From Anolis carolinensis (lineage: Eukaryota), in assembly GCF_035594765.1 (NCBI RefSeq), contig NC_085846.1, positions 42,457,190-42,521,189 of the forward strand: a DNA stretch of 64,000 bases, given 5' to 3'. The notes under the pieces are model-generated. The model ran no database searches, was not told the origin of the DNA, and was given only the letters and a program-made list of their open reading frames with translations. Position 1 is the stretch's first letter, and every line of letters starts with the position of its first letter. A program made the position numbers and the translations under genes. Below, in pieces: positions 3,601 through 42,615 of this stretch.

Positions 3601-6600
3601 AGAGAGATTAAATAAGCTCCCTCCTTCCTGACCTTCAGCAAAAAAGTGAAGACGTGGCTCTTTGACCAAGCCTTTGAAAATCTAGTGCAATAATTAGATA
3701 TGAAAGATGTGTAATTGTCCTATGGAACAGCCCGGACTACGCCTATGAATCACGTGATTTTAACTTGTTGTATGGATTTAAATGCTTTAATTGTTTTAAT
3801 GGTATGGTTATTTTTTTTTCACATTTCAATTAATTTTTATTGTGATTTTGTTATACAGTACATATTAAGGGGGCAAGGGGAGGGTAAAGGAGGGGCGTTG
3901 GGAAGGGAAGGTTTGGGGGAGGAAAGGTTGAGACCAGAGGAGGGAAAGGGTATGTTGAAAGGTTCTGGGGTAGGAAAGGGGAGGGGAGGGGTATGTCTGG
4001 GGGGGTATAGGGGGGGTACATTAGGGGGTTAGGGAGGAAAGGGGGTATGTGTGGATTTCCGATCTGTATTCATCTTATTTCTTCTCTTCAGTCACCACCT
4101 ACAGTCATTTATTCTTCTTTATTCCTTTGCTTTGGTATGGTTATTTTTATTGTACTATGTTTTTAAAGGCATTGCCCATGTTGTGAAGCCGCCTTGAGTC
4201 CCCTCCAGGTTGAGAAAGGCGGGATAAAAGAGCCATAAATAAATAAATAAATAATTGCAAAAGGCATTGTAAAAATAAGCTTCTTTCTCAGAGGCTTTGT
4301 TAACTGAGGTGTGCTTGCAAAGTAAATGTCATAACTAATGATAAGAATTGCCTTTCTCAGTTCCAAATAGTTATTGAGATTTCCCGAAACAACAGCCATT
4401 ATTACAGAATTAAATATTGCTGCCATTTCACTATAAGACATTTATAATTTCTAATATCCCACTTTATTATTATCCTGCCATCTGAAAAACGATATAGAAA
4501 ATGAATGTGATGCCTAAAACTAAAAACAACCTAAATAGTAATATTTTGGTCATAAGACAGATCCAGTTGTTATATATGTATGCAAAACATAGTCTAATTG
4601 ATTTTGGCATTATGTTATGTTATGTTATGTTATGGCGAAGTGTGTTAAAGCACTGAGCTGCTGAACTTGCAGACCGAAAGGTCCCAGGTTCAAATCCCGG
4701 GAGCAGAGTGAGCGCCCGCTGTTGCTCCAGCTTCTGCCAACCTAGCAGTTCGAAACCATGCCAATGTGAGTAGATCAATAGGTACCGCTCCAGCGGGAAG
4801 GTAACAGTGCTCCTTGCAGTCATGCCGGCCACATGACCTTGGAGGTGTCTACGGACAACGCCGGCTCTTCAGCTTAGAAATGGAGATAAGCACCAACCCC
4901 CAGAGTCAGACATGACTGGACTTAACGTCAGGGGAAACCTTTACCTTTATGTTACATTTTCTGTCAGAATCACCTAGCAAATATACCAATTTCCACTTCA
5001 GAGATCAACTTGGGAATTTACATAGAACAGATATAATGAGTCTTAGTCTCTAGCTAACCAGATTTCACTATGTGAATACATGATAACATACTCACCCAAA
5101 TAAGTCTGTCATCATCCTTTTGCAAATAATCCTTTCTGTTTATGAAAGTGTGTTTATATAACCTGGGAGGTTCCAATATAAACAAAGAGCCTTGAAGCTT
5201 TACTTTTAAGGTGCCACAATATTCTTAAATATAAAATACTTTTGTCCACAGGTTCCTCACACATTTTGCTTTCTAAACCCTCTCATGGAAACTTTTTTTA
5301 TTTTTACCTACAGCTGGAATTTGTGAGAATGTTGTGCTGCTTCTGCTTGCATCTTGCCTAGACATATGTATGTCAAGAGGGGCAACATCCAGTTATCTTC
5401 CTACTTGGCAGCTTGGACTTAAGCCCAAGTAAAGGGCTCAAGGGTTTTTCCCCAGAGGAGGGTTTTTTTTATATAATGTGAGTTGCTTGCAAAGCCTGGT
5501 AAATTGGGCCTTCACCATCAGTTTCTGAACCCAAGTGTACTGTTTGTTTGGATGTTTGTGTATCATGTTCCTGTTAACATACACTACTGTTAGAGATGGA
5601 ATAGAACTGCATGCTTTTATGCCCTATGTATCCTGCAAATAGATATTGACATATGATGTAATTTTATGGGATGCCACTACTCCATAAATGACTCCTGTAG
5701 ATTTGTGTGGGCCGGTAATATAATAGAACTATTTTTCTCAAATAGATGAGCCAGAGGTCCTCACAGAACCGCCCAGTGCTACTACCATCACCACCATAGG
5801 TATATCTGCAACATGGACAACTTTGGCAGGTTCCCATGGAAAAAGAATAAATACTGTCACCACTAGCAGCTCCAAGAGGAAAAGCCGGAAAAACAAAATC
5901 AACCAAGATTCTGTTCAGATTATTTTTGATGAGCAACTCCCAATCTCCTATTCTCAACCAGAGAAAATGAATGGTGAATCAAAAAGCAGTAGTACCAGCG
6001 AGAGTGGTGATAGCGACAACATGAGGATTTCCAGCTGTAGTGATGAAAGCAGCAACAGTAACAGCAGCCTCAAAAGTGACAGCCAATCTTCTACAATGGC
6101 CCCTATTGCTCAGAGCAACAAGAAGCAGCCCTCAGTTCTGGTCACCTTCCCAAAGGAAGAGCGGAAAGCTGTTTCTGGCAAATCTTCAGTCAAGTAAGCA
6201 TCTAAGGCTTTTGCTTCCTCATTTAACACAGCCTTCATAATAACATGATCTACAAGTCCCATTTGGCCATGCTGACTGAAGATAATGGGAGTTGTAAACC
6301 AATCTGCCTGAAAGAGTTCTGAAGAAGACTTTCTGATCTCTTAGGACACCCTTGTGACTTTTATCCTCTTTATCATGCATTATTTTATTGATTACTATAT
6401 TTAATTGCATAATAGTCATACTGTTTATCCTTTTTTACCTAAGAATAGGGGTGTGAGTATTATGTGGTGAAAAATTCCAACTACAAGACTTAACTTGACC
6501 AGCAGCCAAGTGAAGCCCTGTAACTGGAAAGGTAGCAGATATGCCCCCTTGCTTGTGCACCCATCCCCTTTGGTCAAAGAGGGATGACTATTAAATGGTG

Positions 6601-9600
6601 GTGACTATTACATGGTGAAATATGGTAGATTTGTGAATCATTTGCAAGAAAATTTAAAGGAAAATATGGGTTTTCCCCCATATGTTGTCAATTTAGGTTG
6701 ATTTGGCAGTTTTTAGTAATCATCTAGTGCATTTTTTTCTGTGAATCTTTGATACTGAGATCAGTCATCAGGACTTAATGTCAAAATATAATTAAGTGTA
6801 AACACAGCACACTTGATTTTTTTATCCTGAACAAATAATATTAAATTGTATCTTTCATGTAATTGTTCATTTGACTTTTGAGCCTGAGGGAAATGTAATT
6901 GCTTGGATTCAGGCTTCCATTCATTTCAGTAGCTGTATTCTAAAAACCATATGACTAAATCCAACATTAGTCTTCCCTAGACAGACACAATACAATCATT
7001 GGGAGGAAAGTTATTCATTACTATAAACTCTAATTTATTTTATTGGATCAACTCCGTATATTCTTGTTGGATTTGGTCTACTGAATTCATTCCAGTGTTC
7101 TGATGTTAAAGCTGCCACTCAGTAGACCAGGGGGAAGTGCCTGCATTTGTCTTGTATTTTGATCTTATAAACACTATGTTAACATGCAATTCTTTATTTT
7201 TCCCAACCCACCCCCTTTCCTGTGAAAGGTTGTCAGACGTCATTACAGAAGTCACGAATAATTCCTTATCTACTTGCACAAAATCTTGTCCATCGCCACT
7301 CTCCTCTCCTAATGGAAAAATCACTTTAGCCAGCCCTAAACGTGGTCAGAAGAGGGAAGAAGGGTGGAAGGAGGTTGTAAGAAGGCAAGTGAAATTCTGC
7401 TACTATGATCAATTTCATTTTCCTCAGTGGCAGTCTCCTTTTCAAAGGTTTTACATTAGTATTGTTTTATATTGTTGCAAAACGTCATATTTAGCTGGTA
7501 ATTGTATGCATTGTTTTATGTACACATATCTCAGCTTGTTATTTCAAGTCATGGATTAATATCAAAGCTTTTTCTAGGCCAGCACCAGATAAGCAGAAGG
7601 TGAATATCCTTCCCATGCTAGTGATTTTACTCAGTCTTGTCAGCCTTTTTCATAGAAGATGGGCATTTTTAAAGTGCTTCAGTATTTGGTGTTGTCCACA
7701 ACTTTCTAAGTCTGGCCCTGAAATCTCAATTCCTAGTTTCATGTATTGCTGCAGCCTTTCTTTGCACTTACAAATTAGCTGGAAAGGACAAACTCTTAGA
7801 ATGTACAAGAATGTACCTTTCTGGCCCACTAAATTTGTGATTCTGTGAGTTTACTTGCATGTAAAAAGCTCCTTGATACAAGAGCCTGCTGTTCATCATG
7901 ATTTATGTACCTACCTCGCTCCTTACTTATCTCTGCCTAACTTGGAGTTTATTGAAACAATTATACTTGATATTCATAAGTTTTTCTTTTTTTAGATCAA
8001 AGAAGGTCTCTGTTCCATCGACTGTTATTTCCAGAGTAATTGGAAGAGGTGGTTGTAATATTAATGCTATCAGAGAATTCACTGGAGCGCACATAGACAT
8101 TGATAAGCAAAAGGACAAAACAGGCGACAGAATCATAACAATAAGGTAATACAAATTCAGATTTTTTATTTTAGCTGTCATAATAATATGTTAAATGAGA
8201 CAGATTTCTGAATATTTTTATAGATACGTTTGTAAGAGCTGCAATTAAACATAGTATATTGTTGGTCTTTAGCAGAAGAGATGCATCTATGAGCTGCTAC
8301 TAGTGGATCAGTACTCTTGTACTCTTCCAGGACATATATGAGATTCATGCAGACCAGTAATGTCTCTCCAGGTTTCCAGTTGACAATAACATTTGGCAGT
8401 TCTTGAAAGCCAGTGGGCATTCTCAGTCCTCCCTGCTTTTTTCCTTCTTCTTTTCCTTCTTTCAGTTTATACTTCTGGATATTTCAAGATTCACCTGAGT
8501 ATGCTGATACTTCTTTGCTTGTTTCACACTGGCTCTGTTTTGGTTCCAGTCCTGTGGATGATTGTTGTTAGAAAAAAGCTATTATTCTACAAATACTATA
8601 CTGTAAAGCTGTTAAATTTCATTTCTTCAAAGTTTATTCATTTTGTACATTTTCTTAATATGTGGGAAAATGTCAATGTATTTGTAAATGAGAAAACAGT
8701 GGTCAGGTCCTCATGTGTTTGTTCAATTCTGTTAATAGGGGAGGCACTGAATCAACAAGACAAGCAACACAGCTCATAAATGCTTTGATTAAGGATCCAG
8801 ACAAGGAAATTGATGAGCTCATTCCAAAGAATCGTTTGAAAAATTCTGCAGCCTACCCCAAGACGGGGATGGCAATACATACCGCCACTGCAACTGCTCA
8901 CAGTTCTGTAAACGGAAGCAAGGCAACCACAGTAGCAATCTCATCATCACCTCAGATTTCCACAGCACTTTCCGTGCCTGCTGCTTGTTCCGTATCTACT
9001 CACAAAACAGTCAAAAACCCTGTGAATAATGTGCGGCCTGGATTTCCAGTTTCTCTGCCATTAGCATATCCTCCTCCCCAGTTTGCACATGCTTTGCTTG
9101 CTGCTCAGACTTTCCAACAGATCCGTCCTCCGAGGTTGCCTATGACTCATTTTGGAGGAACTTTCCCACCAGCCCAGTCCACCTGGGGCCCCTTCCCCGT
9201 TCGACCTCTGAGCCCTGCAAGAGCAACCAACTCACCTAAGCCTCACACGGTGCCTCGCCATAACAATCAGAACAGCAGTGGTTCTCAGGTGAATTCAGTG
9301 GGTTCTTCAACATCCAGTCCGACAGCTACCACGAGTTCAGCTGTGTCTACTGTGCCTGTTTCTTCTGCAAGTGGCAGCCCCAGCTCACCTTCAGTTCGAA
9401 GGCAGCTGTTTGTCACTGTAGTTAAGACATCCAGTACCACCACGACCACAATAGCAACCACAGCAAGCAACAATAGCACAACACCTACCAATGCCACATA
9501 TCCTTTTCCTACTGCCAAAGAGCACTATCCCGTGTCGTCCACTTCCTCCCCTTCTCCACCAGCCCAGCCAGTGAGAGCTTCTAGAAGCAGTCCTTCAGAA

Positions 9601-12600
9601 TGTGTGACAGGTTCTCCAAGTAAAGGCGTGCTTTCCTCTGATCAGGAAGTGGGGAGCCCTCCAGCAGTCGAAGCAGCAAATCTGGCCAGCAACAGGCAAT
9701 CAAGCAGTGGTTCTGTTGGTGTTTCTTCAGAGCACCCTTCTCAGCCACAGCCTCTCAGGTCTGTTTCTCAAGAAGCGAGGCCACCTCTACAGCAGCCTCA
9801 GGTTCCATCACAAGATCCTCGAATGGTTGTGCCTCCAAACTTAGCAGCAGTGAGTTCTTCTGCCCCAGCAGTTGCTCCCGCTATTGCACCTGTGAATTCC
9901 CCAGCAAACTATCTTTTGCCTCAAGCATCAGTGGCAGCTCCTCAGCAACCTCCTCCAGTTAAAATGGAAAGCCCCGCTATCCGGCTGCCTTCCCATGGGA
10001 CAAATCCCACGCACAAGAATTCCATTCCTGTCCAGAATTCTTCAGTTGCCGTCCTTAATGTCAACCACATAAAAAGACCCCATAGCGTTCCTTCATCAGT
10101 GCAACTTCCTTCTACCTTAAGTACACAAAGTGCTTCTCAAAATTCAGTCCACCCACCAAACAAGTCTATGGCCACTAACTTCAGTGCTGCTTTACCATTT
10201 GGACCCTTCAGCACACTGTTTGAAAACAACCCTGCTTCTGCTCATGCCTTCTGGGGTGGATCTGTCTTGTCATCTCAGACAGCTCCAGAGTCCATTATAC
10301 CTGGAAAATCTTCATTTCTGCCAAACCCAGATACATTACACCAATTAGATACTTCCAAAGCTCCAGGTTTTAGGCCCCCACTGCAGAGACCAGCTCCAAA
10401 TTCCTCAGGTGAATATTTACACTTTCTTTTCTTGCTTCACAATACTATCACACAATTTATATATCAATTTATGTATCTTTATGTGTACTTGATACTAAAT
10501 AATCTGGTTAGTATAACTTGATCTTACTGTGTATTTCTTGCATATTGTTTCCCAGTAGTTTGAAACTTTTGGATGGGATAGAGGTATTCTTTCTCTGCAG
10601 TAGGAACCTTTTTCATGGAAGAAAGGCTTAGCTGGAGCACAGAATATCAGATATTTCATATTTCCTTCTCACAACTCATCTTTCTCCTCAACAACAAATT
10701 GATCTGCTCTGTACAAATGTAAACTAGTTGAATATCAATAGAGAAATTATAACTCAGTGTCATTGAGCACCATGGAAAGATGACAAATTATCTCATTATT
10801 TTGCATGTTTGGATTAGTAAATTCATAAGATCCCTTCCTTTCAATAGATTTATTTTGTACATTTTGTACAATTTATGCCAAGTTAGAAAAGTACACAAAG
10901 AAAAGCTTTTTCAGTTGACACAGAAACTGTTTGCTAAATGTTCAAGTGAGCCAGGGCCTGCAGCCAAGTGACGAAAATCAGCCGAACAGCTGATTTTAAA
11001 ATTGGTTTCACTGGTTTTTTTGTTCCCATGGAGTTGTGCTGTTCCGTGCAATCTGAATGGACGAAACGGTACAAAACCACGAATGAAACAGATGAAACAG
11101 GATTCAACCCCAACCCTACTTCTAGTTTATCTTGAGATTGTGAAGACGTAAGGGAACTCACAATATAATTTTGGATAGGTATCCTGTTTAAATGTACTTG
11201 CAACTAGGGTTTAAGTGCAGTTGTTAGTGCCAGGTAGAACAAACACATTTAATGAATTTTAATGAATTATTTTAAATGGAACTAGAAGGTGGACTTATAT
11301 CATTATTAGTAGAACTAATATTTTGCAGATCATTTGATAGGTATTGTCAGCATGGATTCGCCATATGGTTCTGTAACACCTTCTTCTACGCATTTGGGCA
11401 ACTTTGCCTCAAATATTTCAAGTGGTCAAGTGTATGCACCGGGAACACCTCTTGGAGGAGCACCGGCAGCTGCTAATTTTAACAGACAGCATTTCTCCCC
11501 ACTCAACCTTTTGCCTCCATGTTCCTCTGCATCAAATGGTGAGTTTTGTTGAAGTATTTGTAACTCTGGGTATTCCAACATTCTATTAGATCTCCCGGAT
11601 TGGTGCCATACAGAAGGAGAGAATTACTTCTTTTTCATTGGCTCTGTTTTGATTGGAATATTTTTTACACTGAAATGGTTACAGTCATGCCTCCATTATG
11701 TCCACTAGAGCCTAATAGTATAGCCTGTCTGATTCTGTACTATTAAAGGATTTAATTTAATCTTTACAGAACATACAGTTTGGTTTGCTGACAGATTAAA
11801 CTCTCCCTTTTTCTTAGAAATTGGAATGCTGACAACTGTGCTTGTGATGCACTCTGCCAAAAAGATCCTTCCAATAATTATTCCCATTGTACATTTAGAA
11901 AGTCAGTTGTGAATACCTGAAATAATTGGCCCAGCATTCAGCTTGGTGGGTAGAACATGGTTAGGTGGATTTTGATCATGACGTAGCAGCCAATGAGGTT
12001 CAGTCTCCTGTTGTAAGTGTAGATTGTGGTGGAAGCCTGTCTTCTTGAAATGTTAGAACTGTTGAACTTCTCTAATGTGTTTAAATACTCTTTTTTCTCT
12101 AGAGCCCCCTGCTCAGCCAGTATCTGCGGGAGTTAGAGCACCCTCCCCAACACCTTCGGCTGTTTCCCTCGGGTCAGAAAAGCCCAACAGTGTGTCTCAG
12201 GACAGAAAGGTCCCTGTCCCAATTGGAACTGAGCGTTCTGCACGTATCAGGCAAACTGGAACAACGACGCCCTCTGTTATAGGCAGCAACTTAGCCACCC
12301 CAGTCGGTCACAGTGGTATATGGTCTTTCGAAGGGATAGGGGGAAATCAAGGTGGTAGGTATTGCTTGTACACATTTATGTATCATCCTCTGCTACTGTG
12401 TTAGGGGGCAGCTAAGGCCTTGATTGGAATGGCAAGAAGGCAGCGAAGGCATAGGAATGGCAAGAATTGTATTTGTTCCATAGCACCGTCATTGTTTATT
12501 GTTTATTGATTCATTTAAAGTTAAATATTTAAATTATTGTTTTAAAAACTAATATTACACTGTGGTGCATTACAAAAAAACTGGAGCAAAACCAATCTGC

Positions 12601-20649: not shown

Positions 20650-21530
20650 TTCAACAAGGACAAATGTAAGACACTACACTTAGGCAGAAAAAACCAAAAT
20701 ACAAAAATATAGAATGGGTGATGCCTGGCTCGACAACAGTACGTGTGAAAAAGATCTTGGGAGTCTTCATGGACAAGTTGAACATGAGCCAACATGAGCT
20801 AAAAAGACAATGGGATTTTGGGCTGCATCAAAAGGAGTATAGCATCTAGATCAAGAAGTCATGGTGCCTCTTCAGTTTTGGTCAAACCTCACCTGGAATA
20901 CTGTGTCCAATTCTGGAAACCATAATTCAAAAGAGATATCGAAAAGCTGGAATTTGTCCAGAGGAGGGCAACTCGGAATGATCAAAGGCCTGGAGACCAT
21001 GAATCCCTATGAGGATCGTCTTAAAGAGCTTGGGATGTTTAGCCTGCTGGCACGAAGGTTGAGAGGAGACATGATAGCCATATATAAATATGTCAATGGA
21101 CCGCATAAGGAAGAGGGAGCTGTATTGTTTTCTGCTGCCCTGGAAACTAGGGCCCCTTCCACACAGGTGAATAAAATTCCACATTTTCTGCTTTGAACTG
21201 GAATATATGGCAATGTGGACCAGTTCAAAGCAGATATTGTGGTATTTTCTGCCTTGATATTCTGGGTTATGTGGCTGTGTGGAAGGGCCTGAGGACTCTG
21301 AGCAATGGGTTTAAATTACAGGAAAGGAGATTCCACCTGAACGTTAGGAAGAACTTCCTGGCTGTGAGAGCTGTTCAACAGTGGAACTCTCTGCCTTGGA
21401 GTGTGGTGGAAGCTCCATCCTTGGAAGCTTTTAAACAGATCTTCCTGGGCTTCTTTGTGATTTTCCTGCATGGCAGGGGGCTGGACTAGATGGCCCATGT
21501 GGTCTCTTCCGACTCTGTTATTGTTATTTA
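20650..21530 (+). mobile_element. CR1 LINE 3' fragment
   Basis: YEDRLKELGMFSL..RRLRGDMIAIYKY; FKLQERRFHLNVRKNFL; CR1-type tail. Confidence 0.9.
21150..21289. mobile_element. PIF/Harbinger-like MITE nested in CR1 (related pieces at 21590-21724 and 42500-42615)
   Basis: TIR ggccccttccacacag / ctgtgtggaagggcc. Confidence 0.7.
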
Positions 21531-21842
21531 AAAACCACATTGCACCACTTCCAGTTTTCACTTCATCTCTCAGGAGTATTTTAGTTTGATGCCATATCAC
21601 CCAGAATATCAAGGCAGAAAATCCCACAATATCTGCTTTGAACTGGGTTATCTGAGTCCACACTGCCATATATTCGAGTTCAAAGCAGATAATGTGGGAT
21701 TTTATTCAGATCTATGGAAGAGGCCAGTCCTTTTCAGCTCTACAATTCTGCCTTCCAAAATACAATTAAAAAAATACACAATCTCTAAACACTAAAATTG
21801 TTCACTTTGGGCAGCTTGTTACTACAAACACGAGAACTCCGC

Positions 21843-21924
21843 CGCAACGTGGGTCGCCATCTTGCCCGTCGCGATGCGCATGCGCATGCGCATCGCGACG
21901 GGCAAGATGGCGACCCACGTTGCG
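21843..21924. repeat. Perfect 82-bp palindrome (41-bp arms, no spacer)
   Basis: Checked base by base; centre between 21883 and 21884 (tgc|gca). Confidence 0.97.
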
Positions 21925-22263
21925 CCGCGGCTGCTAACGATTTCTTGGCCCGCGCGAGGGCTATTGCCGTGCTCCTCGCGCCTCCTCGGCTTCCAGTCTC
22001 TTGGCTTGGGAGCGCGCGCCCTCAGTACGCATGCGCCCGAGGGTGGCGGCGGCGGCGGCGGCAGGGGCCTCGGAGCCCCTTCCTGGGGCTGGTATGAGGC
22101 CTTGGCTTCGTCGGCGCCCGTCGCCTGTGCGGAGGCCGGCTTGGCCACGCTGCAGGCCGCCTCGGGGCTCCCGTGGTGGGCCACCGTGGTGACTGCCAGC
22201 GCACTCCTCCGCACGGGCCTCACGCTCCCTCTCGCCGCCTTACAGAGCCGCGTCCTCGCCAAG
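21907..22263 (+). CDS. COX18: COX18 exon 1
   Basis: aagATGg Kozak context, AAG|GTGGGC donor; upstream in-frame ATGs at 21874, 21880 and 21886. Confidence 0.88.
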
Positions 22264-25200
22264 GTGGGCAAAACTTTGGGGCATCTCTGAGCATGCGCAG
22301 TATGCCTCTTCCTTGGAACCAGGTGGGAGATTGGGGAAGTGGACATTGATGGCGATTGGAGACTCGGGGTGCCTCTCTACATTGTAGAATTAGCGTCGTT
22401 TGGCACTAGTTGATTTCTCTAAGGGTCACATACCTCTAAATAATATATATTTCAATCGTTTACTGGCTTTCCTTTCTTGGCAGGAATCTGGAGCATTCCC
22501 TGGCATCTGCTAACATGCAGTATAAAGGGTTTGCCCAGTGTTGTGGGCCAGATGTCCTGGGGTGTTATGTGGGTGCATAAGAAGGACTTCTGGAATACAT
22601 GGATTCTGGCCAGTGTAGACAAGAACTGTGGCTTCTCCTAGTATAGGTAAAGGAAAAGGTTTCCCCTGACGTTAAGTCCAGTCGTGACCAACTCTGGGGG
22701 TTGGTGCTCATCTTCATTTCTAAGCCGAAGAGCCAGCATTGTCCATAGACACCTCCAAGGTCATGTGGCCGGCATGACTGCATGGAGCGCTGTTACCTTC
22801 CCACCGGAGCGGTACCTATTGATCTACTCACATTTGCATGTTTTCAAACTGCTAGGTTGGCAGGAGCTGGGGCTAACAGCGAGCGCTCATTCCGCTCCCG
22901 GGATTTGAACCTGGGACCTTTTGGTCCGTAAGTTCAGCAGCTCAGCGCTTTAACACACTGTGCCTCCAGGCTCTAGTATAGCCACTCCTAGTATAGTGAG
23001 ATGGAATTCCATTAGAAATCACATTTTCATACACAAACCCACGTGAGAGCTTGCACAACTCATCCCACATAGTATGAAAGACTAAAAAGCCTCTTCTGAA
23101 TGAGAGAAATTCTCATTTGGTACTAATTGCCATCTAGGTGTTATTGGAAGGTGTAATACAACAGAGCTAGTAGCAATTCTCATTTCAGCCTCATTTTATG
23201 GACATCAAACATGACCATAAATCTGGTACAGCTCAGTTCAAACTACTACTGCATTTTAACCACCTCATCACATTGAGAGGGGAAGCATGGGTGACCGTCC
23301 CTTTAAGAGTTGAGAATCACCCCTCTTACATTGTCAGCAATCCTGGATAGGGTTCTGCCTCCCCATCACACTCACAGGGACAGTGGAAACGTAAGAGTTG
23401 GCAATATGTTCTTTTTACATTCACCACAAGGTCGGTATTACTTTTTTTAAAAAGTCAGGAGAAACAACAGTAACCGAAAACCAAGAGATCCCTTGCCCTG
23501 CCCAAACGCCCCCTACATTAAAGGAGACTGACAATAGGTTAAAATAATAATAATAATAATAACAACAACAACAACAACTTTATTTTTAAACCCTGCCTCC
23601 ATCTCACCAAAGGGACCCAGGGCGGCTAACATGGGGCCAAGCCCAGGTAAACACACCATAAAAGGATAAAATATATACATCATACAAAATAGACAAGGTA
23701 AAATTCAGTTGTCCGCAATGACATAACAAAATAGCAAAAAACAAGAATGACATAATAAAACATAATATAAAAGCAAAACTAAGGTTAAACAAGAGCAAGC
23801 TGAGCCAAAATGCAAGAATTGTAAACCCAATGGGTGAGGTGGATGGGTAATGTGCTGTGTTTAAAAGAGGGCTTGAGGGTGAAAAATGAAGTTATTTCTG
23901 GGTGACAGAGCAGAATAAAATATGTCAGACATCGTGATTGTTACTGAGGGGAACTTTCCATGTCATCCTGTGATTCTGCATTAAAGCAGTAGGATACAAG
24001 GGACAGTGATCCAGGTTAAAACCATTGCTTTCCATGGGATCCTTTTGTTCTCCATCAAAGCCCATAGGATGCAAGAGACAGTGATCCAGGTTAAAACCAT
24101 CGCTCATTGTTGGCCAGTGAAATAGGAGGGGAAACTTTGATGGTTGCCTCCCACCTGTTTTTCAGTTGTAAAAATTTGAGTAAAGTGTAATAAGGGGTAG
24201 GAGCTCTGAACACGATTGCTGGCCTGTGTTCAGGGGTCCCTCCTTTCAGGACAGTTCTGCCTCTTTTCAACCCTGAAACATGTGATGAGCTCCGTACTTC
24301 TCCATGCTAGAAAAGAGGCAGAAGTGTCCTACCAGGGGAAAATCTCTCAATGTGATGAGGTTGATTGCCGAATTTCCCTCTTTTCAGGACACTTCTTCCT
24401 CTTTTAAACCACTGGAAGGGGGCTATGCATGACAGCCAGAAGTAGTTTCACTCATGTAATGAACTCAGTGTAAGTTGTAGGATAATAACTCCCATGATTC
24501 CATAACATTGAGCCATGACAATTAAAGTGGTGTCAAATTGCATTGAATAATGGATGTGATTTGGCACCACTATAACTGCCATGGCTCAGTGCTATGGAGT
24601 TATCATGGGCGAAAGGTGTTTCAGCTGAAGCTTTATTACCAATCCTTGTTTCCACAGCAAGCCATTTTTTTTCAAAATCTAATTCAAAGTGAGATGCAAT
24701 AATCTGAACAGGGGCACAAACAGTAAAACAAATGCCACAGGAGTGTTAAACATTCCTTGTGCTATCCAAATACGTAGGCACTTTAAAAATGTACCTGTTC
24801 CAACTTAACATACAGTCAACTCAAGAACAAACCTACAGAACCTATCTTGCTTGTAATTCAGGGACTGCCTGTACACAAAGAAAGAAAGTTTCTGACTACC
24901 ATTTCTGTATCTTTTCAGCTAGCTGGAAAACTTGCAACCTGAAATTCAAAGCCTAGCCAAGCATCTCCGCTATGAAGTTTCAGTATATGCAAAACAACAG
25001 GGTTGGTCTGAAAAACTAGCCAGGTAAGAGCTTTAGAGCAGCATAACTAATCAAACCTAAGAAGCTATGAATGTTCTTTAGCATTTAATATTTATATTTG
25101 TTACAGCTACAGTAGAGTCTTGCTTATCCAACATAAATGGGCCGGATAAGCAAAAATGTTGGATAATAAGGAGGGATTAAGGAAATGCCTATTAAACATC

Positions 25201-28200
25201 GGATGACATTATGATTTTACAAATTAAGCACCAAAACATCATGTTTTACAACAAATGACAGAAAAAGCAGTTCAATGCACGGTAACGTTATGTAGTAATT
25301 ACTGTATTTATGAATTTAGCACCAAAACATAGCAATGTATTGAAAACATTGACTACAAAAACACTGACTACTAAAATGCAGACTGCATTGGATAATACAG
25401 AATGTTAGATAAGCGAGTCTCTACTGTATGTACTGATACAACTGGAATTCCTCTTATCTAGTGGTAAATTTCTGCAATGTATAATTCTTTAGTGTAGTCT
25501 ATCTTAGATTTTGTTATTACTCTATGCTGCCTGTATGCCCATCTCTAGGATCCATCTTTCTGTACTTTCTGTGAAATCTTTGTATGCACTACAGTAATGC
25601 CTTTGTAAGTGTACAGTAATGTCTATGTTATGCCATCCTTGAATGTATTTTGGAAGAAATTTTCTAGTGGTTTTTGTCCACATATACAAGGCTTACGTGA
25701 TGTAGTTGTTTCATTTCAAATGTACATATTGTTGGGTTTTGATAAAAGGTTTTCTGGAATATTTTTCTGCTATAGGAACCTATCAATATTATTTCCATTT
25801 TATTTCTTTGGCAGTAAATGTTAAAGAAGTAATACCCAGGAACACTACTTACACCAAATAGGCTACTTACACCAAATAGCCAGTTCCATTCTATGTATAT
25901 CAGTACATAGAATGGAATGAAGATTGTCAGCATTAAACTGGTAAATAAAATCAATGCATTAATATATCAGAAATAATTTTACTGTGTGGTGATTTGAAAG
26001 TTAAATATAGGGATATTATAGGCTGAGTAGCCTTTATCCTTAATTAAAGGAAACTAGGTGAAATTTGCACTTCAGTCTTCAGTAAGACTAATACTTCATT
26101 ATACAGTAGAGTCTCACTTATCCAACACTCGCTTATCCAACATTCTGGATTATCCAACGCATTTTTGTAGTCAATGTTTTCAATATATTGTGATATTTTG
26201 GTGCTAAATTCATAAATACATTAATTACTACATAGCATTACTGCATATTGAACTACTTTTTCTGCCAAATTTGTTGTCTAACATGATGTTTTGGTGCTTC
26301 ATTTGTAAAATCATAACCTAATTTGATGTTTAATAGGCTTTTCCTTAATGCCTCATTATCCAACATATTCGCTTATCCAACATTCTGCTGGCCCGTTTAT
26401 GTTGGATAAGTGAGACTCTACTGTACTTAAAACTCATTTTAAGTAAACATTTGGAAACTGAAGTCTGAGCAAATATGTACAGGGTCTCTACTAATCTTTG
26501 GAATTGCTTTTTGGTTGTATTTTGAAACAGGTTACATTTCAAGAAGAACCTGAAAAGGATTGTTTCGGACTTGTATGTTCGTGATAACTGCCATCCTGTC
26601 AAGGCCAGCCTACTTATATGGATACAGATTCCACTCTGGGTCTTTGTTTCCATTGCTTTGCGGAACTTCAGTGTTGGTAGAGCATCTTCTGAAGGTAATA
26701 ATTTTAAACTCATGTTGCTCTAATCATTGAACAACCAATGTGAAAGCCAAAATTTGAAGAGATGATCATACATTCTTAAATGGGAAGAGTATTCAAGGCT
26801 AAAAAGTTGTTATTGTTCCTTGTACTGGAATGACAGTCGGCTGATTATGGAAGTTTTGTTCACAATAAACGTTTTCTCTAATGTAATCAATTGTTGTACT
26901 GGAAGACTTATGTGAAGCACATTGGTAAATTAATACTTTTACTTTGACTACTATGGCTAAAATTTAGGTAATGACATAAATGTATAATTTGGGATCATAT
27001 GGATGTGTACCTGATTCTGCACATCCATGACAACAAGAAATGGCCATACCAGTTCCAGAGCTTGGCAGCAGCCTTCCAGACACAGGAGAGGCATTGAACT
27101 GAATGACTTCAGTCAATAATTTCAGCATATGTAGTATGAAAGTAACTTGGAATAATATACAGTAGAGTCTCACTTATCCAAGGTAAACGGCCGGCAGAAG
27201 CTTGGATGAGCGAATATCTTGGATAATAAGGAGGGATTAAGGAAAAGCCTATTAAACATAAAATTAAGTTATGATTTTACAAATGAAGCACCAAAACATC
27301 ATGTTATACAACAAATTTGACAGAAAAAGTAATTCAATATGCAGTAATGTTATGTTGTAATTACTGTATTTACAAATTTAGCACCAAAATATCATAATAT
27401 ATTGAAAACATTGATGACAAAAATGGCTTGGATAATCCAGAGGCTTGGATAAGCGAGGCTTGGATAAGTGAGACTCTACTGTAAATTGAACCAAGCCAAA
27501 AAACTCCAATGTGAACAGCATTCTGCCCTTCCTTTGCCCATGTTTGGTTTGTGCATGTGTATGTATAGAGAGAGCGATTGACTCTGTTTTCCTGACCAGA
27601 CAGATTTCCATGCACAGAAACACAAAGTTTCAAATATGCAAACCTATGGTTTAGAAGCCAATTATATACCTTGGTTGGCACTAACAAGACAACTTGTCAT
27701 TATAAATCATTATTAATGCATGAACAAATGTGCCATTAACCTTAAACAGCTTACTATAAAATGGTAGCCTAGAGAGAAGGACATTCATTTCTATTGAACC
27801 TCAGTGACATAATGGGTTAATCCTTTGTGCCGGCTGAACCTGAAGGTCAGCAGTTTGAATATGTGAGATGGCATGAACTCCCATCTGTCAGCCCCAGCTT
27901 CCCATGCGAGGACATTAGAGAAGCTTCCCAGCAGGATGGTAACACATCCGGGCATCCTTGGGCAAATTTCTTTGTAGACGGCCAATTCTCTCACACTAGA
28001 AGCGACTTGCAGTGTGTTCTCAATTTGCATCTGACATGATTTAAAAAATTCTCTACCTAAATGCATATAGGTACAATCTTAAAATACTTGTTTATTATTA
28101 ACAAGACCCATACATAGCATTGTTGCACAGGTCAGTCTTCTCCTCTCCCTAGCCCTAAATTGAGAGAGGCTTATGTGGTTAGTTACAAATGGATAGCGGC

Positions 28201-31200
28201 ATATCTTTTTCTTCCTCAATACACAAAGTCTCCTGCAGGTGTAGCTGTTGGACTTTGGAATCTTACAGTTCAGAGATGCCTCTTAGTTTCAATTGTTGAA
28301 ATTGAATACTGTATTAGATAAAGGGGGGACTTCTAAACAAGCCAGTTGAATCTCCAGAAACTGGCAGCATTCTGCATGGTTTGATTTTGTTCTGAAAAAT
28401 ATTTAAGACTGTCGTAATTTATGGAACCCTAGTTGGGATTATGTAACTTGGAAAGTTTCCAACTTTTAAAAATCAGCATGAGCTACTGCTGAAACTTTTC
28501 TTCAGTGCTTGCAAGTCTGAATCACTTAGAGAGAGGCCAAGATTCAGCAGCTGCCAACTGTTGGGCAAGGATGTACCAGTGATTTCCCCTGGTATTGATT
28601 CAGTGCTCACTTCTGCTAAACATGGTCATGATTTGCCACATTTATTTTTATGTGTATATTTTCTGCAGGGCTTTTCATTCAGGAGCAACTTTCCACAGGT
28701 GGCATGCTTTGGTTTCCAGATCTTACTGTACCTGACCCCACTTGGATCATGCCAATCATTCTTGGAGTCCTCAATCTGCTGATAGTGGAGGTATTTAAAG
28801 ATCACACCACATCTTTAATTGGCTTGCAATTAATTATGATAGCACTGTGATTTTACATTTCTGTTTGAGAAAAAAGGAGTAAGACTGAATGAACTATGGG
28901 TTCCCATTTCAAAAAGAAAGCACAGAGAGACAATTTTAAAAGGCACAAAGAGGAGAAAGCTGTTTTCTCAATCTGTCAAAACAATTAGGAAAGCAGAGAT
29001 TTCTGAGCAAAGGAATGTGGAAGAACTTCTGATAAGATATTCCTTCTTGTGCCTGATAAATGAACAGTTAGGGAAAAAAAACCAAAATGGTCTTTATTAC
29101 ATAGAAATGCTCACACCTAATTTTGTGTTAATTTCCTGTTATCTGGATTATGTATATTGGGGTTTGCTTAATGGTGATGTAATACTGTTTTTCATTGCAA
29201 ATCAACAGAGCTTTTATGTAAATACTTACAGTCATAAATTCTTGTTCAGATCACTGTAACTTCACCCTAGGAAACTATTTTCCATGTTTATTCTCCCTTC
29301 TGCAGAATGCCAAAATTAAAAACTAATTGATTTTCTATAGTTGAAAGTTTTTAAAAATTCAAAGTTTCACTGCAGCAATTATATTGCAAATAGCAAAGCA
29401 ATTTCTCAGTAAAAATGGATGAAAATGAACAGTTGCAGTCGCCATTCCTACTCATGAGCCATTCTTGTAAAATATTACAAGTGCCCAGGTAGCCTTCATT
29501 TTGGAAATTGTGAACTTGTCTTGCTTCTGATAATTTCTGAAAAATGCTGCCAGGAGCAGAATAGGTTTTACAATCTTGTTGGCACAGTTATAGATGATGT
29601 GCTAAATTGCCTCATAGGTACAATGAAAATTCCCACTTCTTTTTTGGGAGCAGTTACCCATCAGGGAGACAGGGGGCACATCTACACTCACCATTTAGCA
29701 CAAAGGGCACCTGAATAAACTCTGTGACCACCTAATTACAAACTGAGCAGGCCCAGTTTAACTTGGCCTTGAGATAGACCCACGTAACCAGATGGATCAG
29801 TTCTGAGATGGAATCAGCCATAACTGTTTACATAACTCCAGGAGCTTGAGTAGTCCAGGGACATGGGATGTCCCTCCTATTCTGTGTCACTCCAGGTGTG
29901 ACATAGGTCCTGCTGGTCACTTGTTGCCTGCTTTGATGTCAAGTAGAGCAAGGAAATGATTGAAGAAGAGAGGAAGAAACGGAAGGGGTGATTCTCCCTG
30001 GACTCTCTCTCCCATCGTTCCGATGCCCTGCCCAATGTTATTTCAGGTGATGAATGACTGACAGGACACATGTCACACTCAGACTACTGTGACAAGAAGA
30101 AAGGGAGAGAATGTAAGTGGTTAGGATTTCCTCCTGTCTCTACAGCCTCCTATATACCATACCAGATAAGCCCTGGGATAAGAGATCAGTGTACAGTGTT
30201 CCCTCACTACTTCGTGGTTCACTTTTTGCGGATTCACTGTTTCGCAGTTTTTCAGTAAACTCTAAAAGACTATTATAAATAATAAAAAATTACAATTCAC
30301 AGCCTAAGGAAGGGAGGAAGGAGAAGCCAGAGGGAGAGAAAAGGAGCCCAAGCGGCAACGGGAGGAGAAGGAGGTGATTTATCAACACATGATTGGTTGC
30401 TAAAGACTTAAAATAGTGTTTAGGTTTTAAAGGTTTTCCCCTGACGTTAAGTCTGATTCTGGGGGTTGGTGCTCATCTCCATTTCTAAGCTGAAGAGCCG
30501 GCATTGTCCATAGATACCTCCACGGTCATGTGGCTGGCATGACTGCATGGAGCGCCGTTACCTTCTCGCCAGAGCGGTACCTATTGATCTACTCACATTG
30601 GCATGTTTTCGAACTGCTAGGTTGGCAGGAGCTGGAACTAACAGCGGCCGCTCACGCCGCTCCCGGGAATTGATCCTAAAATAGTGTATAACTACTAAAA
30701 TAATGAATAAATTTTAAAATTAATATAGCGTCTCTACTTCGCGGATTTTCTCTTATTGCGGGTGGTCCTGGAACCTAACCCCAGCGATAAGTGAGGGAAC
30801 ACTGTAGATGAGGTTAATCCCAAATCTAGCACATGATAATTTCCAACTAAAGATAAGGGTATTTGCAAATTGTTTAATATATGGAGCAGATACAGACATG
30901 CAAAGAAGTGAAAATACAGTACAAACAGTCCCCGAGTTATATAAAACTCTTTGTTACAAAGCGAGGTAAGACAACAAGAAGTGAAAGGAAATCTACTCCT
31001 AGGAAGGGAAATTCACTCCTGTAAAAGTTATCATGAGAAAAAGGTCTGTCCCCAATGTTTGTTACCACGACAGTGCCAAATTTTCAAAATCCAATTGTCA
31101 CAGGGAGAGAAGTTGAGGTGAGATCTGAACAGGCAAAGACAGCAAAATAAATGTTACAGTGCTTTTAAACCCACCCGCCTCCATGCTATCCGAAACTAAT

Positions 31201-32458
31201 ATAAATACATGTTTTTGGTTGGAGTTACACTTAAAAATGTACCTGTTCAGACTTCCATACAGATTCAATTTAAAAACAACATATAAAACCTATCGTGTTT
31301 GTAACCTGGGGAGTGTCTTCATAGCTTATTAATTTATTTGACTTGAATGTTCCTGTTACTGAATCTCACATTTGCATGACATCATACCAGTCTGTTTCCT
31401 GCAGTTCTTAAAAGTGACATTTATCTCCCTAGATTTTTGCTTTACGAAAAATAGAATCTTCCAGATTTCAGAGGTATGCTACAAACTTCTTCCGTGGGAT
31501 ATCTATATTTATGATCCCAGTTGCTGCAACTGTGCCTTCGGTAAGCAATTCAGAACAGTAATGCTGAAGTCTTTTAATTCTGGTGTGTACCATGAAATGC
31601 ATTGGAAATCAACCCATAGTTTGCTCGAATGAGTCTGGAAATACCTTTGTGAAACAGCTTCTTTTTAAGACAGAATGCTGCATGCACAACAATATTTTCC
31701 ATGTATGTGCCGTGTCTTTTGGGGAGGTGCTTCTGCTTCTTTACTTTGTGCTTCCTTGCCCCAACTTTGTGCTTCTAAAGTTGTTAAAGTTGTTCCTTCT
31801 TTGTTATTGTTCCATGTGAATATGCATTTATACATTATTTGTTATTTATAAAGTACATTTTCTTATTTAAAAACACGTAACAAAAATATGGGGGATTTGG
31901 AGGTTGGAATGGATTAATAGCATTTCAATGGGAACATTCACTTTGAGATAAGATGTTTTGAGTTAAGAGCTAAGTCACGGAACAAATTAAATTTTTAAGT
32001 CAAGGTATTTGACTTAAGGTATTTGTATATTGTTATAGTGCTTCACTAAGCCTTCCTGACTTTGTTTTGAGAATGAAATGAAAGAGGGATACAAAACGTA
32101 TATATCACCTTGACATATACAAACGTATATATCACCTTGACATTACTAAAATATAATTGAGTAAATTAAGTTGTTCACATTGAATATTTCTAATAAAGAA
32201 TGGCAACACACATTCACTTGGGGACATGTTATTTCATAAAAACGTCTTTGCTTTGTTGAAAGTAATATTTCATTTTTTAAATTGCAGGCCATAGCTTTGT
32301 ACTGGGTATCATCAAGTTTCATGGGCCTCTTACACAACCTTTTGCTACGCTCCCCTGCTTTCCGTAGATTGTGCCGCATTCCTCGGACCAAATCTGATTC
32401 AGACACTCCTTACAGGGACATTGTTTCTGCTTTCTACGTAAAATATTTCTTCAAGTAA
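21907..32458 (+). CDS. COX18: COX18, cytochrome c oxidase assembly factor (Oxa1/YidC family), 6 exons, about 340 aa
   Basis: Exons give GLPWWATVV..LRTGLTLPLAA, ENLQPEI, RDNCHPVKASLLIWIQIPLW, GGMLWFPDLTVPDPTWIMP, PVAATVPS and ALYWVSSSF; N-terminus resembles a mitochondrial presequence. Confidence 0.95.
22646..22972 (-). mobile_element. Sauria SINE
   Basis: Reverse complement of the 4633-4949 family. Confidence 0.9.
24923..25023 (+). CDS. COX18: COX18 exon 2 (LENLQPEIQSLAKHLRYEV...EKLAR)
   Basis: ctag acceptor, AG|GTAAGA donor. Confidence 0.9.
25110..25426. mobile_element. Tc1/mariner (Tigger-like) MITE
   Basis: TIR cagtagagtct..cttatcca, TA TSD. Confidence 0.85.
26104..26423. mobile_element. 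Tc1/mariner MITE, same family, opposite orientation
   Basis: TIR cagtagagtctcacttatccaac, TA TSD. Confidence 0.88.
26531..26694 (+). CDS. COX18: COX18 exon 3 (LHFKKNLKRIVSDLYVRDNCHP...RASSE)
   Basis: aacag acceptor, G|GTAATA donor. Confidence 0.93.
27160..27481. mobile_element. Tc1/mariner MITE, same family
   Basis: TIRs and TA TSD. Confidence 0.88.
27797..28048 (+). mobile_element. tRNA-derived SINE (second Anolis SINE family)
   Basis: Degenerate A/B-box head, A-rich tail. Confidence 0.65.
28669..28790 (+). CDS. COX18: COX18 exon 4 (GLFIQEQLSTGGMLWFPDL...NLLIVE)
   Basis: tgcag acceptor, GAG|GTATTT donor. Confidence 0.93.
30194..30804. mobile_element. Tigger-like MITE hosting a SINE
   Basis: TIR cagtgttccctcact / agtgagggaacactg, TA TSD. 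Confidence 0.85.
30420..30676 (-). mobile_element. Sauria SINE (5' truncated) nested in a MITE
   Basis: 11-bp TSD taaaatagtgt. Confidence 0.9.
31433..31540 (+). CDS. COX18: COX18 exon 5 (IFALRKIESSRFQ...AATVPS)
   Basis: cctag acceptor, TCG|GTAAGC donor. Confidence 0.92.
32288..32458 (+). CDS. COX18: COX18 exon 6 (AIALYWVSSSFMG...YVKYFFK*)
   Basis: tgcag acceptor, TAA at 32456-32458. Confidence 0.93.
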   Translation, partial: AIALYWVSSSFMGLLHNLLLRSPAFRRLCRIPRTKSDSDTPYRDIVSAFYVKYFFK

Positions 32459-42380: not shown

Positions 42381-42615
42381 TCAGAGGAATATGAAATCCC
42401 TTCCCTTGGAGGCCCAACATTGGGCTCTTTCCAATCCATAACATGGCTATCGATTTAAACCCAGGTCGGACCGGACTTTTCCTCTGTGTGGAACCGGCCC
42501 TAGATACAGCTGAATAAAACCCCACATTTCTGCTTTGTACTGGAATTATGGCAGTGTGGACTCAGAAAACCCAGTTCAAAGCAGATATTGTAATATTTTC
42601 TGCTTTGATAGTCTG

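What the first reader, a model, noticed from the sequence alone, without database searches (positions are those of the whole stretch)
21843..21924. Perfect 82-bp palindrome fusing the COX18 core promoter and start codon (YY1-NRF1-NRF1-YY1 mirror)
Seen: two exact 41-bp arms with no spacer. The centre is (TGCGCA)x3, giving overlapping NRF1 consensus sites. Each arm carries a YY1 motif (CAAGATGGCG / CGCCATCTTG), and the right-arm YY1 motif contains the COX18 ATG. The first six codons (MATHVA) are therefore mirrored on the minus strand, where the frame continues AEFSCL*. Known: NRF1 and YY1 typically drive nuclear-encoded mitochondrial genes, and long spacerless palindromes are unstable and rare in unique DNA. 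Inference: the left arm arose by fold-back/template switching seeded by the self-complementary NRF1 site. It could give a symmetric bidirectional promoter, a cruciform, or, if transcription starts upstream of the centre, an mRNA hairpin burying the AUG, so that TSS choice would act as a translational switch.
Basis: partly seen in the sequence, partly recalled or inferred. Interest (0 to 1): 0.78.

Follow-up and report, generated by a model that had tools for sequence, protein, structure and literature searches.

The report
Mirror-duplicated COX18 promoter in an anole
In this anole lizard the 41 bases holding the control sites and start codon of the mitochondrial assembly gene COX18 were copied backwards onto their own upstream side, giving a real, perfect 82-base palindrome that the brown anole and other squamates lack; it is a clean case of a known copying error, and its effect on the gene is untested.

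Summary
Positions 21843-21924 are a perfect, spacerless 82-bp palindrome, the only perfect one with arms of 10 bases or more in the 64 kb. Contigs of three public runs from three studies show the graph pattern a true palindrome gives, so it is not an assembly artefact.

The gene is COX18. The ATG at 21907 is the only invariant residue across eight squamate N-termini. It lies in a TISU/YY1 element, 11 bases after an NRF1 site, and the corn snake has the same layout. The right arm is therefore ancestral.

Anolis sagrei has orthologous flanks, one NRF1 site and no inverted repeat; 16 of its bases stand where this genome has 38 new ones. The left arm is thus a derived inverted copy, best explained by one template-switch (fold-back) event seeded at the self-complementary NRF1 site.

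The regulatory readings (mirror promoter, cruciform, AUG-burying hairpin) remain untested, because no raw RNA reads were available. Published position rules for TISU, NRF1 and YY1 place the main start site right of the centre, which argues against the hairpin switch.

This scan had already noted another palindromic promoter (ACOT13-TDP2) elsewhere in this genome.

The parts
21843..21883 (.). Left arm: derived inverted copy of the right arm. The unambiguously new bases are 21844-21881 (38 nt), standing where A. sagrei has 16 nt.
21884..21924 (+). Right arm: ancestral COX18 core promoter (NRF1 half-site, 11-nt spacer, TISU/YY1 element) plus the first six codons. 31/41 identical to A. sagrei; same layout in the corn snake.
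21875..21892 (.). (TGCGCA)x3 centre: two overlapping NRF1 consensus 10-mers (21876-21885, 21882-21891), inside a 20-nt alternating purine-pyrimidine run (21874-21893). A. sagrei has a single 10-mer.
21903..21914 (+). TISU/YY1 element CAAGATGGCGAC (core AAGATGGC at 21904) holding the COX18 start codon 21907-21909.
   Evidence: PMC2518114
21853..21864 (-). Mirror TISU/YY1 element on the minus strand (ATG at 21860-21858).
21822..21860 (-). Antisense 12-codon ORF MATHVAAEFSCL plus stop. The first six codons are the mirrored COX18 start.
21907..22263 (+). COX18 exon 1 coding part (119 codons), splice donor GT at 22264. 82% identical to A. sagrei COX18.
22028..22036 (.). Second NRF1-like site (CGCATGCGC) inside exon 1, conserved in A. 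sagrei.
21800..22399 (.). CpG island bins (100-bp bins, CpG o/e 0.65-1.46). The island starts abruptly at about 21838, almost at the outer edge of the left arm.

Best explanation
The palindrome is real germline DNA and is the product of one inverted-duplication event in the lineage of this anole after its split from Anolis sagrei.

Proposed origin (inferred). During replication a nascent strand had copied the COX18 NRF1 site, TISU start element and first six codons. It left its template at the self-complementary NRF1 sequence and copied 41 bases of the complementary or its own strand. It then returned at a short CGC microhomology. This replaced 16 ancestral bases with 38 new ones.

Proposed working (inferred). 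The ancestral right arm still runs COX18. NRF1 binds at the centre, and transcription most likely starts in the roughly 10-25 bases between the centre and the TISU ATG. That gives a very short leader without the hairpin. The left arm adds a second NRF1 register and an inverted YY1/TISU element. These may drive a short upstream antisense transcript with a 12-codon ORF. The left arm is most likely a tolerated passenger rather than a selected switch.

Shown: the palindrome, its presence in independent runs, the COX18 identity, the conserved start codon and the ancestral state. Inferred: the replication mechanism, the start-site position and near-neutrality.
For: Perfect 41-nt arms. k=31 palindrome topology in three runs of three studies, with single-copy depth in X1 (7.45 against 5.5-7.6). 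A. sagrei locus L003 has orthologous left flank, one NRF1 10-mer, ATGGCGGC and no inverted repeat. A linear alignment of the left arm gives 11 matches, 8 mismatches and 22 gaps, against 41/41 as a reverse complement. There is no inverted repeat at the COX18 promoter of corn snake, agamid, skink or L002. The snake has GCATGCGCAT-N11-CAAGATGGCG, like the right arm. Met at 21907 is the only invariant column of eight N-termini. Base 21894 C is derived (T in A. sagrei and the snake) and is mirrored at 21873, so the copy was made from an already diverged right arm or was later corrected to it. Template switching is a published one-step source of perfect inverted repeats (PMC5453318, PMC8794818). TISU lies at +5 to +30, with a median leader of 12 nt, binds YY1 and is enriched in mitochondrial genes (PMC2518114). 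NRF1 activates from upstream of a start site and represses from downstream, and YY1 acts just downstream of the start site (PMC11269187).
Against: No start site was mapped. Run X5 (a guess at RNA) has a contig crossing the centre by 15 nt. If X5 is RNA, some transcripts begin left of the centre. RefSeq-style models of A. sagrei, Pogona and corn snake start the protein at an ATG inside the NRF1 site (MRI...), which may mean their transcripts begin upstream of it. Perfect arm identity beside a flank that is polymorphic in X2 (four variant letters at 21949-21969) could also reflect selection or arm-to-arm correction rather than youth. Only one other anole was available, so the event is dated only as later than the A. 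sagrei split. A hairpin-capped break opened off-centre would leave the same sequence.
Confidence: 0.72

Rival explanations
1. Selected regulatory device. The mirror YY1-NRF1-NRF1-YY1 unit would work as a symmetric divergent promoter. Alternatively, through start sites left of the centre, it would give a cap-proximal hairpin that hides the AUG, so that start-site choice tunes COX18 translation.
For: The arms are identical while the next 50 bases are polymorphic in X2. Hairpin strength rises steeply as the start site moves left: -9.8 kcal/mol from 21874, -31 from 21866, -87 from 21843, with the AUG paired from about 21860. The X5 contig crosses the centre. Another palindromic promoter is said to be kept in anoles (scan notes s1-529876 and s1-529877, not tested here).
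Against: No TSS, binding or expression data exist. There is no minus-strand partner gene, and the antisense ORF ends after 12 codons. NRF1 bound downstream represses upstream start sites (PMC11269187). TISU genes have leaders of about 12 nt (PMC2518114). Relatives run COX18 without the left arm.
Confidence: 0.15
2. Same product by another mutational route. A double-strand break at the NRF1 site became hairpin-capped, for example after transposon excision nearby or cruciform or fork breakage. It was opened 41 bases off-centre, like a very long P-nucleotide tract, and was joined to the left flank with loss of 16 bases.
For: The final sequence is compatible. Transposon remains lie within 120-1000 bases upstream (MITE-like 21591-21725, LINE-like ORFs 20861-21489). 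Scan notes report abundant young hAT elements in this genome (s1-517351, untested).
Against: There is no transposon or footprint at the site in A. sagrei or here. It needs more steps than one template switch. The self-complementary seed exactly at the centre is what template switching predicts.
Confidence: 0.08
3. The palindrome is old (anole stem) and A. sagrei lost the left arm. The arms here would stay identical through repeated arm-to-arm correction.
For: Palindromes are deletion-prone (PMC8053094). Concerted arm evolution is claimed for ACOT13-TDP2 in anoles (s1-529877, untested here).
Against: The 16 A. sagrei bases show no trace of a left arm. All four non-anole squamates lack it. It requires a gain plus a clean loss.
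Confidence: 0.04
4. Artefact (fold-back library or assembly error), or a transposon-borne palindromic CpG cassette inserted at the promoter.
For: Fold-back chimeras exist in long-read libraries. This genome is said to hold hAT elements with NRF1/YY1 palindromes (s1-517360, untested).
Against: Three runs from three studies join the left flank to the left arm and the right arm to the right flank. Depth is single-copy in X1. There is no other copy in the window. The right arm is orthologous to the native promoter of other squamates.
Confidence: 0.01

Closest known systems
Short template-switch mutations (Ripley model; four-point model of Loytynoja and Goldman, PMC5453318; Monttinen and Loytynoja, PMC8794818)
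   Same: A stretch is replaced in one step by the perfect reverse complement of adjacent sequence, creating a hairpin-capable inverted repeat. The ancestral state is seen in a sister species, and there is microhomology at the switch points.
   Different: The copied fragment is 41 nt. The product has no spacer because the switch sits in a self-complementary transcription-factor site. It mirrors a whole core promoter with its start codon.
TISU promoters/start sites (Elfakess and Dikstein 2008, PMC2518114)
   Same: The core AAGATGGC holds the start ATG of a nuclear gene for a mitochondrial protein. It fits the YY1 site, and an NRF1 site lies just upstream.
   Different: TISU is described as strictly one-way and downstream of the start site. 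Here a second, inverted copy lies 40 bases upstream. TSS distance and YY1 binding were not tested.
ACOT13-TDP2 palindromic promoter of anoles
   Same: Same genome, a CpG-island promoter of a gene for a mitochondrial protein, built as a near-perfect palindrome with mirrored factor sites.
   Different: That one is said to lie between two head-to-head genes and to be shared by two anole species. The COX18 one has no partner gene, is perfect, and is absent from A. sagrei. I did not re-test those notes.
Bidirectional CpG-island promoters with NRF1 and YY1 sites
   Same: Symmetric arrangement of an NRF1 centre and outward-facing YY1 sites. Position rules (PMC11269187) predict divergent initiation.
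   Different: No gene is seen on the other side, only a 12-codon ORF followed by transposon remains.
Fragile long palindromes (Alu-PAL and similar, PMC8053094; palindromic AT-rich repeats, from my own knowledge)
   Same: Spacerless perfect palindrome able to form a hairpin or cruciform (-64.6 kcal/mol as DNA).
   Different: The arms are 41 nt, against 320 nt or more in the tested cases, with a G+C-rich centre. The palindrome was intact, without variant letters, in all three runs examined.

Membership tests
Template-switch mutation (four-point model) | The derived segment is the reverse complement of nearby sequence | tested here: met
   41/41 bases, adjacent, no spacer
Template-switch mutation (four-point model) | The ancestral or sister sequence lacks the repeat, and one event explains the cluster better than a linear alignment | tested here: met
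   A. sagrei L003 has no inverted repeat. The linear alignment of the left arm gives 11 matches, 8 mismatches and 22 gaps. Four further squamates lack it.
Template-switch mutation (four-point model) | It arose during replication by polymerase switching rather than by break repair | not testable with these tools
   Sequence alone cannot separate it from off-centre opening of a hairpin-capped break.
TISU element | Core AAGATGGC whose ATG is the start codon | tested here: met
   Core at 21904, the only plus-strand copy in 64 kb. The Met is invariant across 8 squamates. Core as given in PMC2518114.
TISU element | Lies at +5 to +30 of the TSS, with a very short leader | not testable with these tools
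   Only contigs of runs were available, with no raw RNA reads.
TISU element | Bound by YY1 | not testable with these tools
   Needs ChIP or EMSA.
NRF1-dependent promoter | Palindromic GCGCATGCGC site close to the start site | tested here: met
   Two overlapping 10-mers at 21876 and 21882 and none elsewhere in the window. Binding was not tested.
Bidirectional (head-to-head) gene promoter | A second gene transcribed from the other strand within about 1 kb | tested here: not met
   The minus-strand ORF stops after 12 codons. Upstream lie transposon remains and plus-strand exons.
Transposon-borne palindromic CpG cassette (hAT family noted by the scan) | Many near-identical copies in the genome | tested here: not met
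   Single-copy depth in X1 and unbranched unitigs. No second copy in the window. The right arm is orthologous to native promoters.
COX18 (Oxa1/YidC-type insertase) | Exon products match named COX18 proteins | tested here: met
   Exon 1 is 82% identical to A. sagrei COX18. There are named COX18 hits carrying PF02096. A later exon matches OXA1L/YidC chains. Single exons alone gave no Pfam hit.

The most novel reading that the evidence does not exclude
The self-complementary NRF1 site is a recurrent seed for fold-back duplication in the anole germline. This would create mirror-image housekeeping promoters (COX18 here, ACOT13-TDP2 elsewhere, and perhaps the palindromic CpG cassettes of hAT elements) that are then kept perfect by arm-to-arm correction. 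At COX18 the mirror TISU would launch an antisense micro-ORF transcript, and start sites left of the centre would give hairpin-capped, poorly translated COX18 mRNAs, so that start-site choice sets COX18 dosage.
Probability: 0.12. Interest if true: 0.7.

Novelty: new member of a known kind. Interest (0 to 1): 0.45.

Why it matters
This is an unusually clean natural example of a one-step mutation that mirrors a complete core promoter together with its start codon. The before state (A. sagrei), the after state and the seed (a self-complementary NRF1 site) are all visible.

It also shows that a perfect, spacerless 82-bp palindrome was intact, without variant letters, in all three runs examined, at the promoter of a gene that is probably essential.

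It offers a natural experiment for published position rules. Does an inverted TISU/YY1 copy upstream of NRF1 start antisense transcription? Do start sites on the wrong side of the NRF1 site stay silent?

If anoles turn out to hold many such mirror promoters, that would point to a lineage-specific mutational bias worth studying.

Tried and rejected
- **Pfam on single exons:** scans of single COX18 exons gave nothing, and so did scans of the upstream ORFs. Identity came from named orthologues instead.
- **Exact look-ups:** the window's exon-1 ORF and the A. sagrei ordinatus protein are not on record. The second A. sagrei cluster member worked.
- **Run X21:** this run of another organism laid nothing even at 80% likeness, so it gave no second relative.
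- **RNA evidence:** no holder is on record as RNA and all runs are kept as contigs. Start sites, strands and levels could not be read, and the nature of X5 stays open.
- **Bacterial promoter/terminator scan:** irrelevant here.
- **Scan notes:** searches by sequence and by template-switch words found nothing.
- **Rejected readings:** assembly artefact, transposon cassette, and a true two-gene bidirectional promoter (reasons under rival explanations and the membership test).
- **Steps deliberately not taken:** the joined, spliced COX18 model was never built; exons were searched one by one by reference. Mammalian hits P0004-P0013 were not fetched, because some could be human.

Full report
**1. 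The observation**

Window 21843-21924 is its own reverse complement over all 82 bases, with the centre between 21883 and 21884. With one mismatch it extends to 44-nt arms. No other perfect palindrome with arms of 10 or more exists in the 64 kb.

As a single strand it folds into a 39-pair perfect stem with a 4-nt loop, lengthened by a few flank pairs. The energy is -93.4 kcal/mol as RNA and -64.6 as DNA, with z-scores of -14 and -16 against shuffles.

The motif claims hold:
- (TGCGCA)x3 at 21875-21892 gives two overlapping GCGCATGCGC sites, the only ones in the window.
- The core AAGATGGC occurs once on the plus strand, at 21904, with the ATG at 21907.
- Its mirror lies at 21856 on the other strand.
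- The minus strand reads MATHVAAEFSCL and then stops.

**2. Real DNA or artefact**

Twenty public runs from eight studies of the same organism hold the stretch. I laid contigs of four runs.
- X1 has one contig running from the unique left flank through the whole left arm and ending at 21898.
- X5 has one contig running from intron 1 through the right arm and ending at 21869.
- X2 has three unitigs: 21735-21872, 21843-21898 and 21895-21948.

These ends are exactly where a k=31 graph must stop on a true palindrome. The 31-mer 21868-21898 is the reverse complement of 21869-21899, and the first 31-mers with a flank base are 21842-21872 and 21895-21925.

So three studies independently join the left flank to the left arm and the right arm to the right flank, and all of them hold centre-crossing words. 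Depth in X1 is single-copy (7.45 against 5.5-7.6). No variant letters fall in the arms, although X2 carries four variants at 21949-21969.

No contig bridges the centre by 31 letters on each side, which k=31 cannot do. Spanning long reads therefore remain the formal last proof. A fold-back library artefact would mirror the flanks too, and here the flanks are unique and different.

**3. The gene and its start codon**

Exon 1 (21907-22263, donor GT at 22264) is 82% identical to Anolis sagrei COX18. It also finds named COX18 proteins carrying PF02096. Later exons lie near 26526-26720, 28632-28847 and 32240-32455, and one of them matches OXA1L/YidC chains.

I searched exon by exon and never built the joined model.

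In an alignment of eight squamate N-termini the Met at 21907 is the only invariant column. Some annotated relatives start seven residues earlier with MRI. That is simply the NRF1 site read as ATG-CGC-AT. In this window the six-base repeat gives three such in-frame ATGs, at 21874, 21880 and 21886.

**4. Which arm is older**

The A. sagrei locus L003 (GCA_037176765.1) aligns on both sides.
- The left flank is shared up to the motif gagaactccgcc.
- On the right, the shared part runs from one GCGCATGCGCAT onward through ATGGCGGC and the coding sequence.
- Between them A. sagrei has 16 bases where this genome has 38 (21844-21881), a net gain of 22.
- A. sagrei has no inverted repeat there.

The corn snake (L004) has GCATGCGCAT, 11 bases, then CAAGATGGCG, the same layout as the right arm. 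The agamid Phrynocephalus (L005) and a skink (L001, 96% identical to the Lerista edwardsae COX18 protein over the searched exon-1 part) keep the CAAGATGG start. None of these has an inverted repeat at the promoter, and neither does L002.

The right arm is therefore the ancient NRF1-TISU module, and the left arm is a derived inverted copy made after the split from A. sagrei.

Base 21894 is C here but T in A. sagrei and the snake, and the C is mirrored at 21873. So the copy was taken from an already diverged right arm, or was later corrected to it.

**5. How it arose (inference)**

One template switch fits best. It departs in the self-complementary NRF1 sequence. The GC at 21882-21883 is common to both states, so the switch point is ambiguous by two bases. 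It copies 41 bases in reverse complement and returns at CGC, where base 21843 is also shared.

This is the published four-point and Ripley type of event, which creates perfect inverted repeats in one step (PMC5453318, PMC8794818). A hairpin-capped break opened off-centre would give the same sequence and cannot be excluded.

On age: the arms differ at 0 of 41 sites, while the right arm and the left flank differ from A. sagrei at 23-24%. Without arm-to-arm correction, zero differences bound the per-arm divergence below about 3.7% (95%) and most likely below 1%. That is roughly the last third or less of this lineage's separate history. This assumes equal rates.

**6. How it probably works (inference)**

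TISU elements lie at +5 to +30 of the start site and give leaders with a median of 12 nt. They bind YY1 and are enriched in mitochondrial genes (PMC2518114). NRF1 activates start sites downstream of its site and blocks those upstream of it. YY1 acts from just downstream of the start site (PMC11269187).

Applied here, the main sense start should lie at about 21885-21902. Such mRNAs carry no arm pairing. By symmetry, an antisense start at about 21865-21882 with a TISU-led 12-codon ORF is predicted.

Sense starts further left would carry cap-proximal hairpins. The energies are -9.8 kcal/mol from 21874, -20.9 from 21870, -31.2 from 21866 and -86.6 from 21843. NRF1 bound downstream should suppress such starts.

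Two hints go the other way. The X5 contig crosses the centre, which matters if X5 is RNA (unknown). And the MRI-type gene models in relatives may mean that their transcripts begin upstream of the NRF1 site.

No minus-strand gene lies upstream. The region holds a MITE-like repeat, LINE-like ORF pieces and plus-strand exons of the upstream neighbour.

I therefore rate the left arm as a tolerated passenger (about 0.7) rather than a selected switch (about 0.15).

**7. Comparison and novelty**

It is a member of the known class of template-switch inverted duplications, and it sits in a known promoter type (NRF1 plus TISU/YY1). Four features are unusual:
- the length of the copied fragment (41 nt);
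- the complete lack of a spacer;
- the mirroring of a start codon;
- the fully resolved ancestral state.

The scan had already noted a palindromic ACOT13-TDP2 promoter and palindrome-rich hAT elements with the same motifs in this genome. I did not re-test those notes. The hAT-cassette reading fails here on copy number and orthology.

**8. Verdict**

The regulatory part is open and somewhat disfavoured. This is a new member of a known kind, with interest 0.45.

Noticed in passing
window 21591-21725 (copies at 21151-21275 and 42504-42615, minus strand): A roughly 115-135-bp repeat whose core is itself a hairpin (37-nt arms at 21618-21654 and 21667-21703, 86% complementary, 12-nt loop). It looks like a MITE and lies 118 bases upstream of the palindrome.
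   Followed up: partly
window 20861-21489, plus strand: Two adjoining ORFs (111 and 98 aa) that look to me like the C-terminal end of a CR1-type LINE ORF2. Pfam gave no hit, so this rests on memory only.
   Followed up: partly
window 5823-12404, plus strand (largest ORF 8713-10521, 602 aa): Serine/proline/threonine-rich exons on the same strand upstream of COX18. By remembered vertebrate synteny this could be the 3' part of ANKRD17. Pfam was blank.
   Followed up: partly
window 21949-21969 and 22035-22074: Run X2 carries a second haplotype with four variant letters (21949, 21952, 21964, 21969) and six gaps, in a contig laid on 21919-22300 that also covers the (GGC)n run coding the Gly7 tract. 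The mitochondrial targeting region is polymorphic while the palindrome is not.
   Followed up: no
L005:1501-1700 (Phrynocephalus forsythii): The deposited COX18 model starts at an upstream ATG in another frame. Read from the TISU ATG at 1533, the first 40 residues match Pogona COX18, and then the frame is lost in a G+C-rich repeat. This is probably an assembly indel or a mis-set start in that record.
   Followed up: partly
window 21874-21893: The duplication lengthened a perfectly alternating purine-pyrimidine run from 12 bases (A. sagrei) to 20 bases. In principle this raises Z-DNA potential at the promoter centre.
   Followed up: no
window 21735-21872 in run X2: The left-flank unitig has about three times the depth of the right flank in X2 (84 against 26) but not in X1 (7.5 against 5.5). 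The kind of library behind X2 is unknown, and the difference is unexplained.
   Followed up: no
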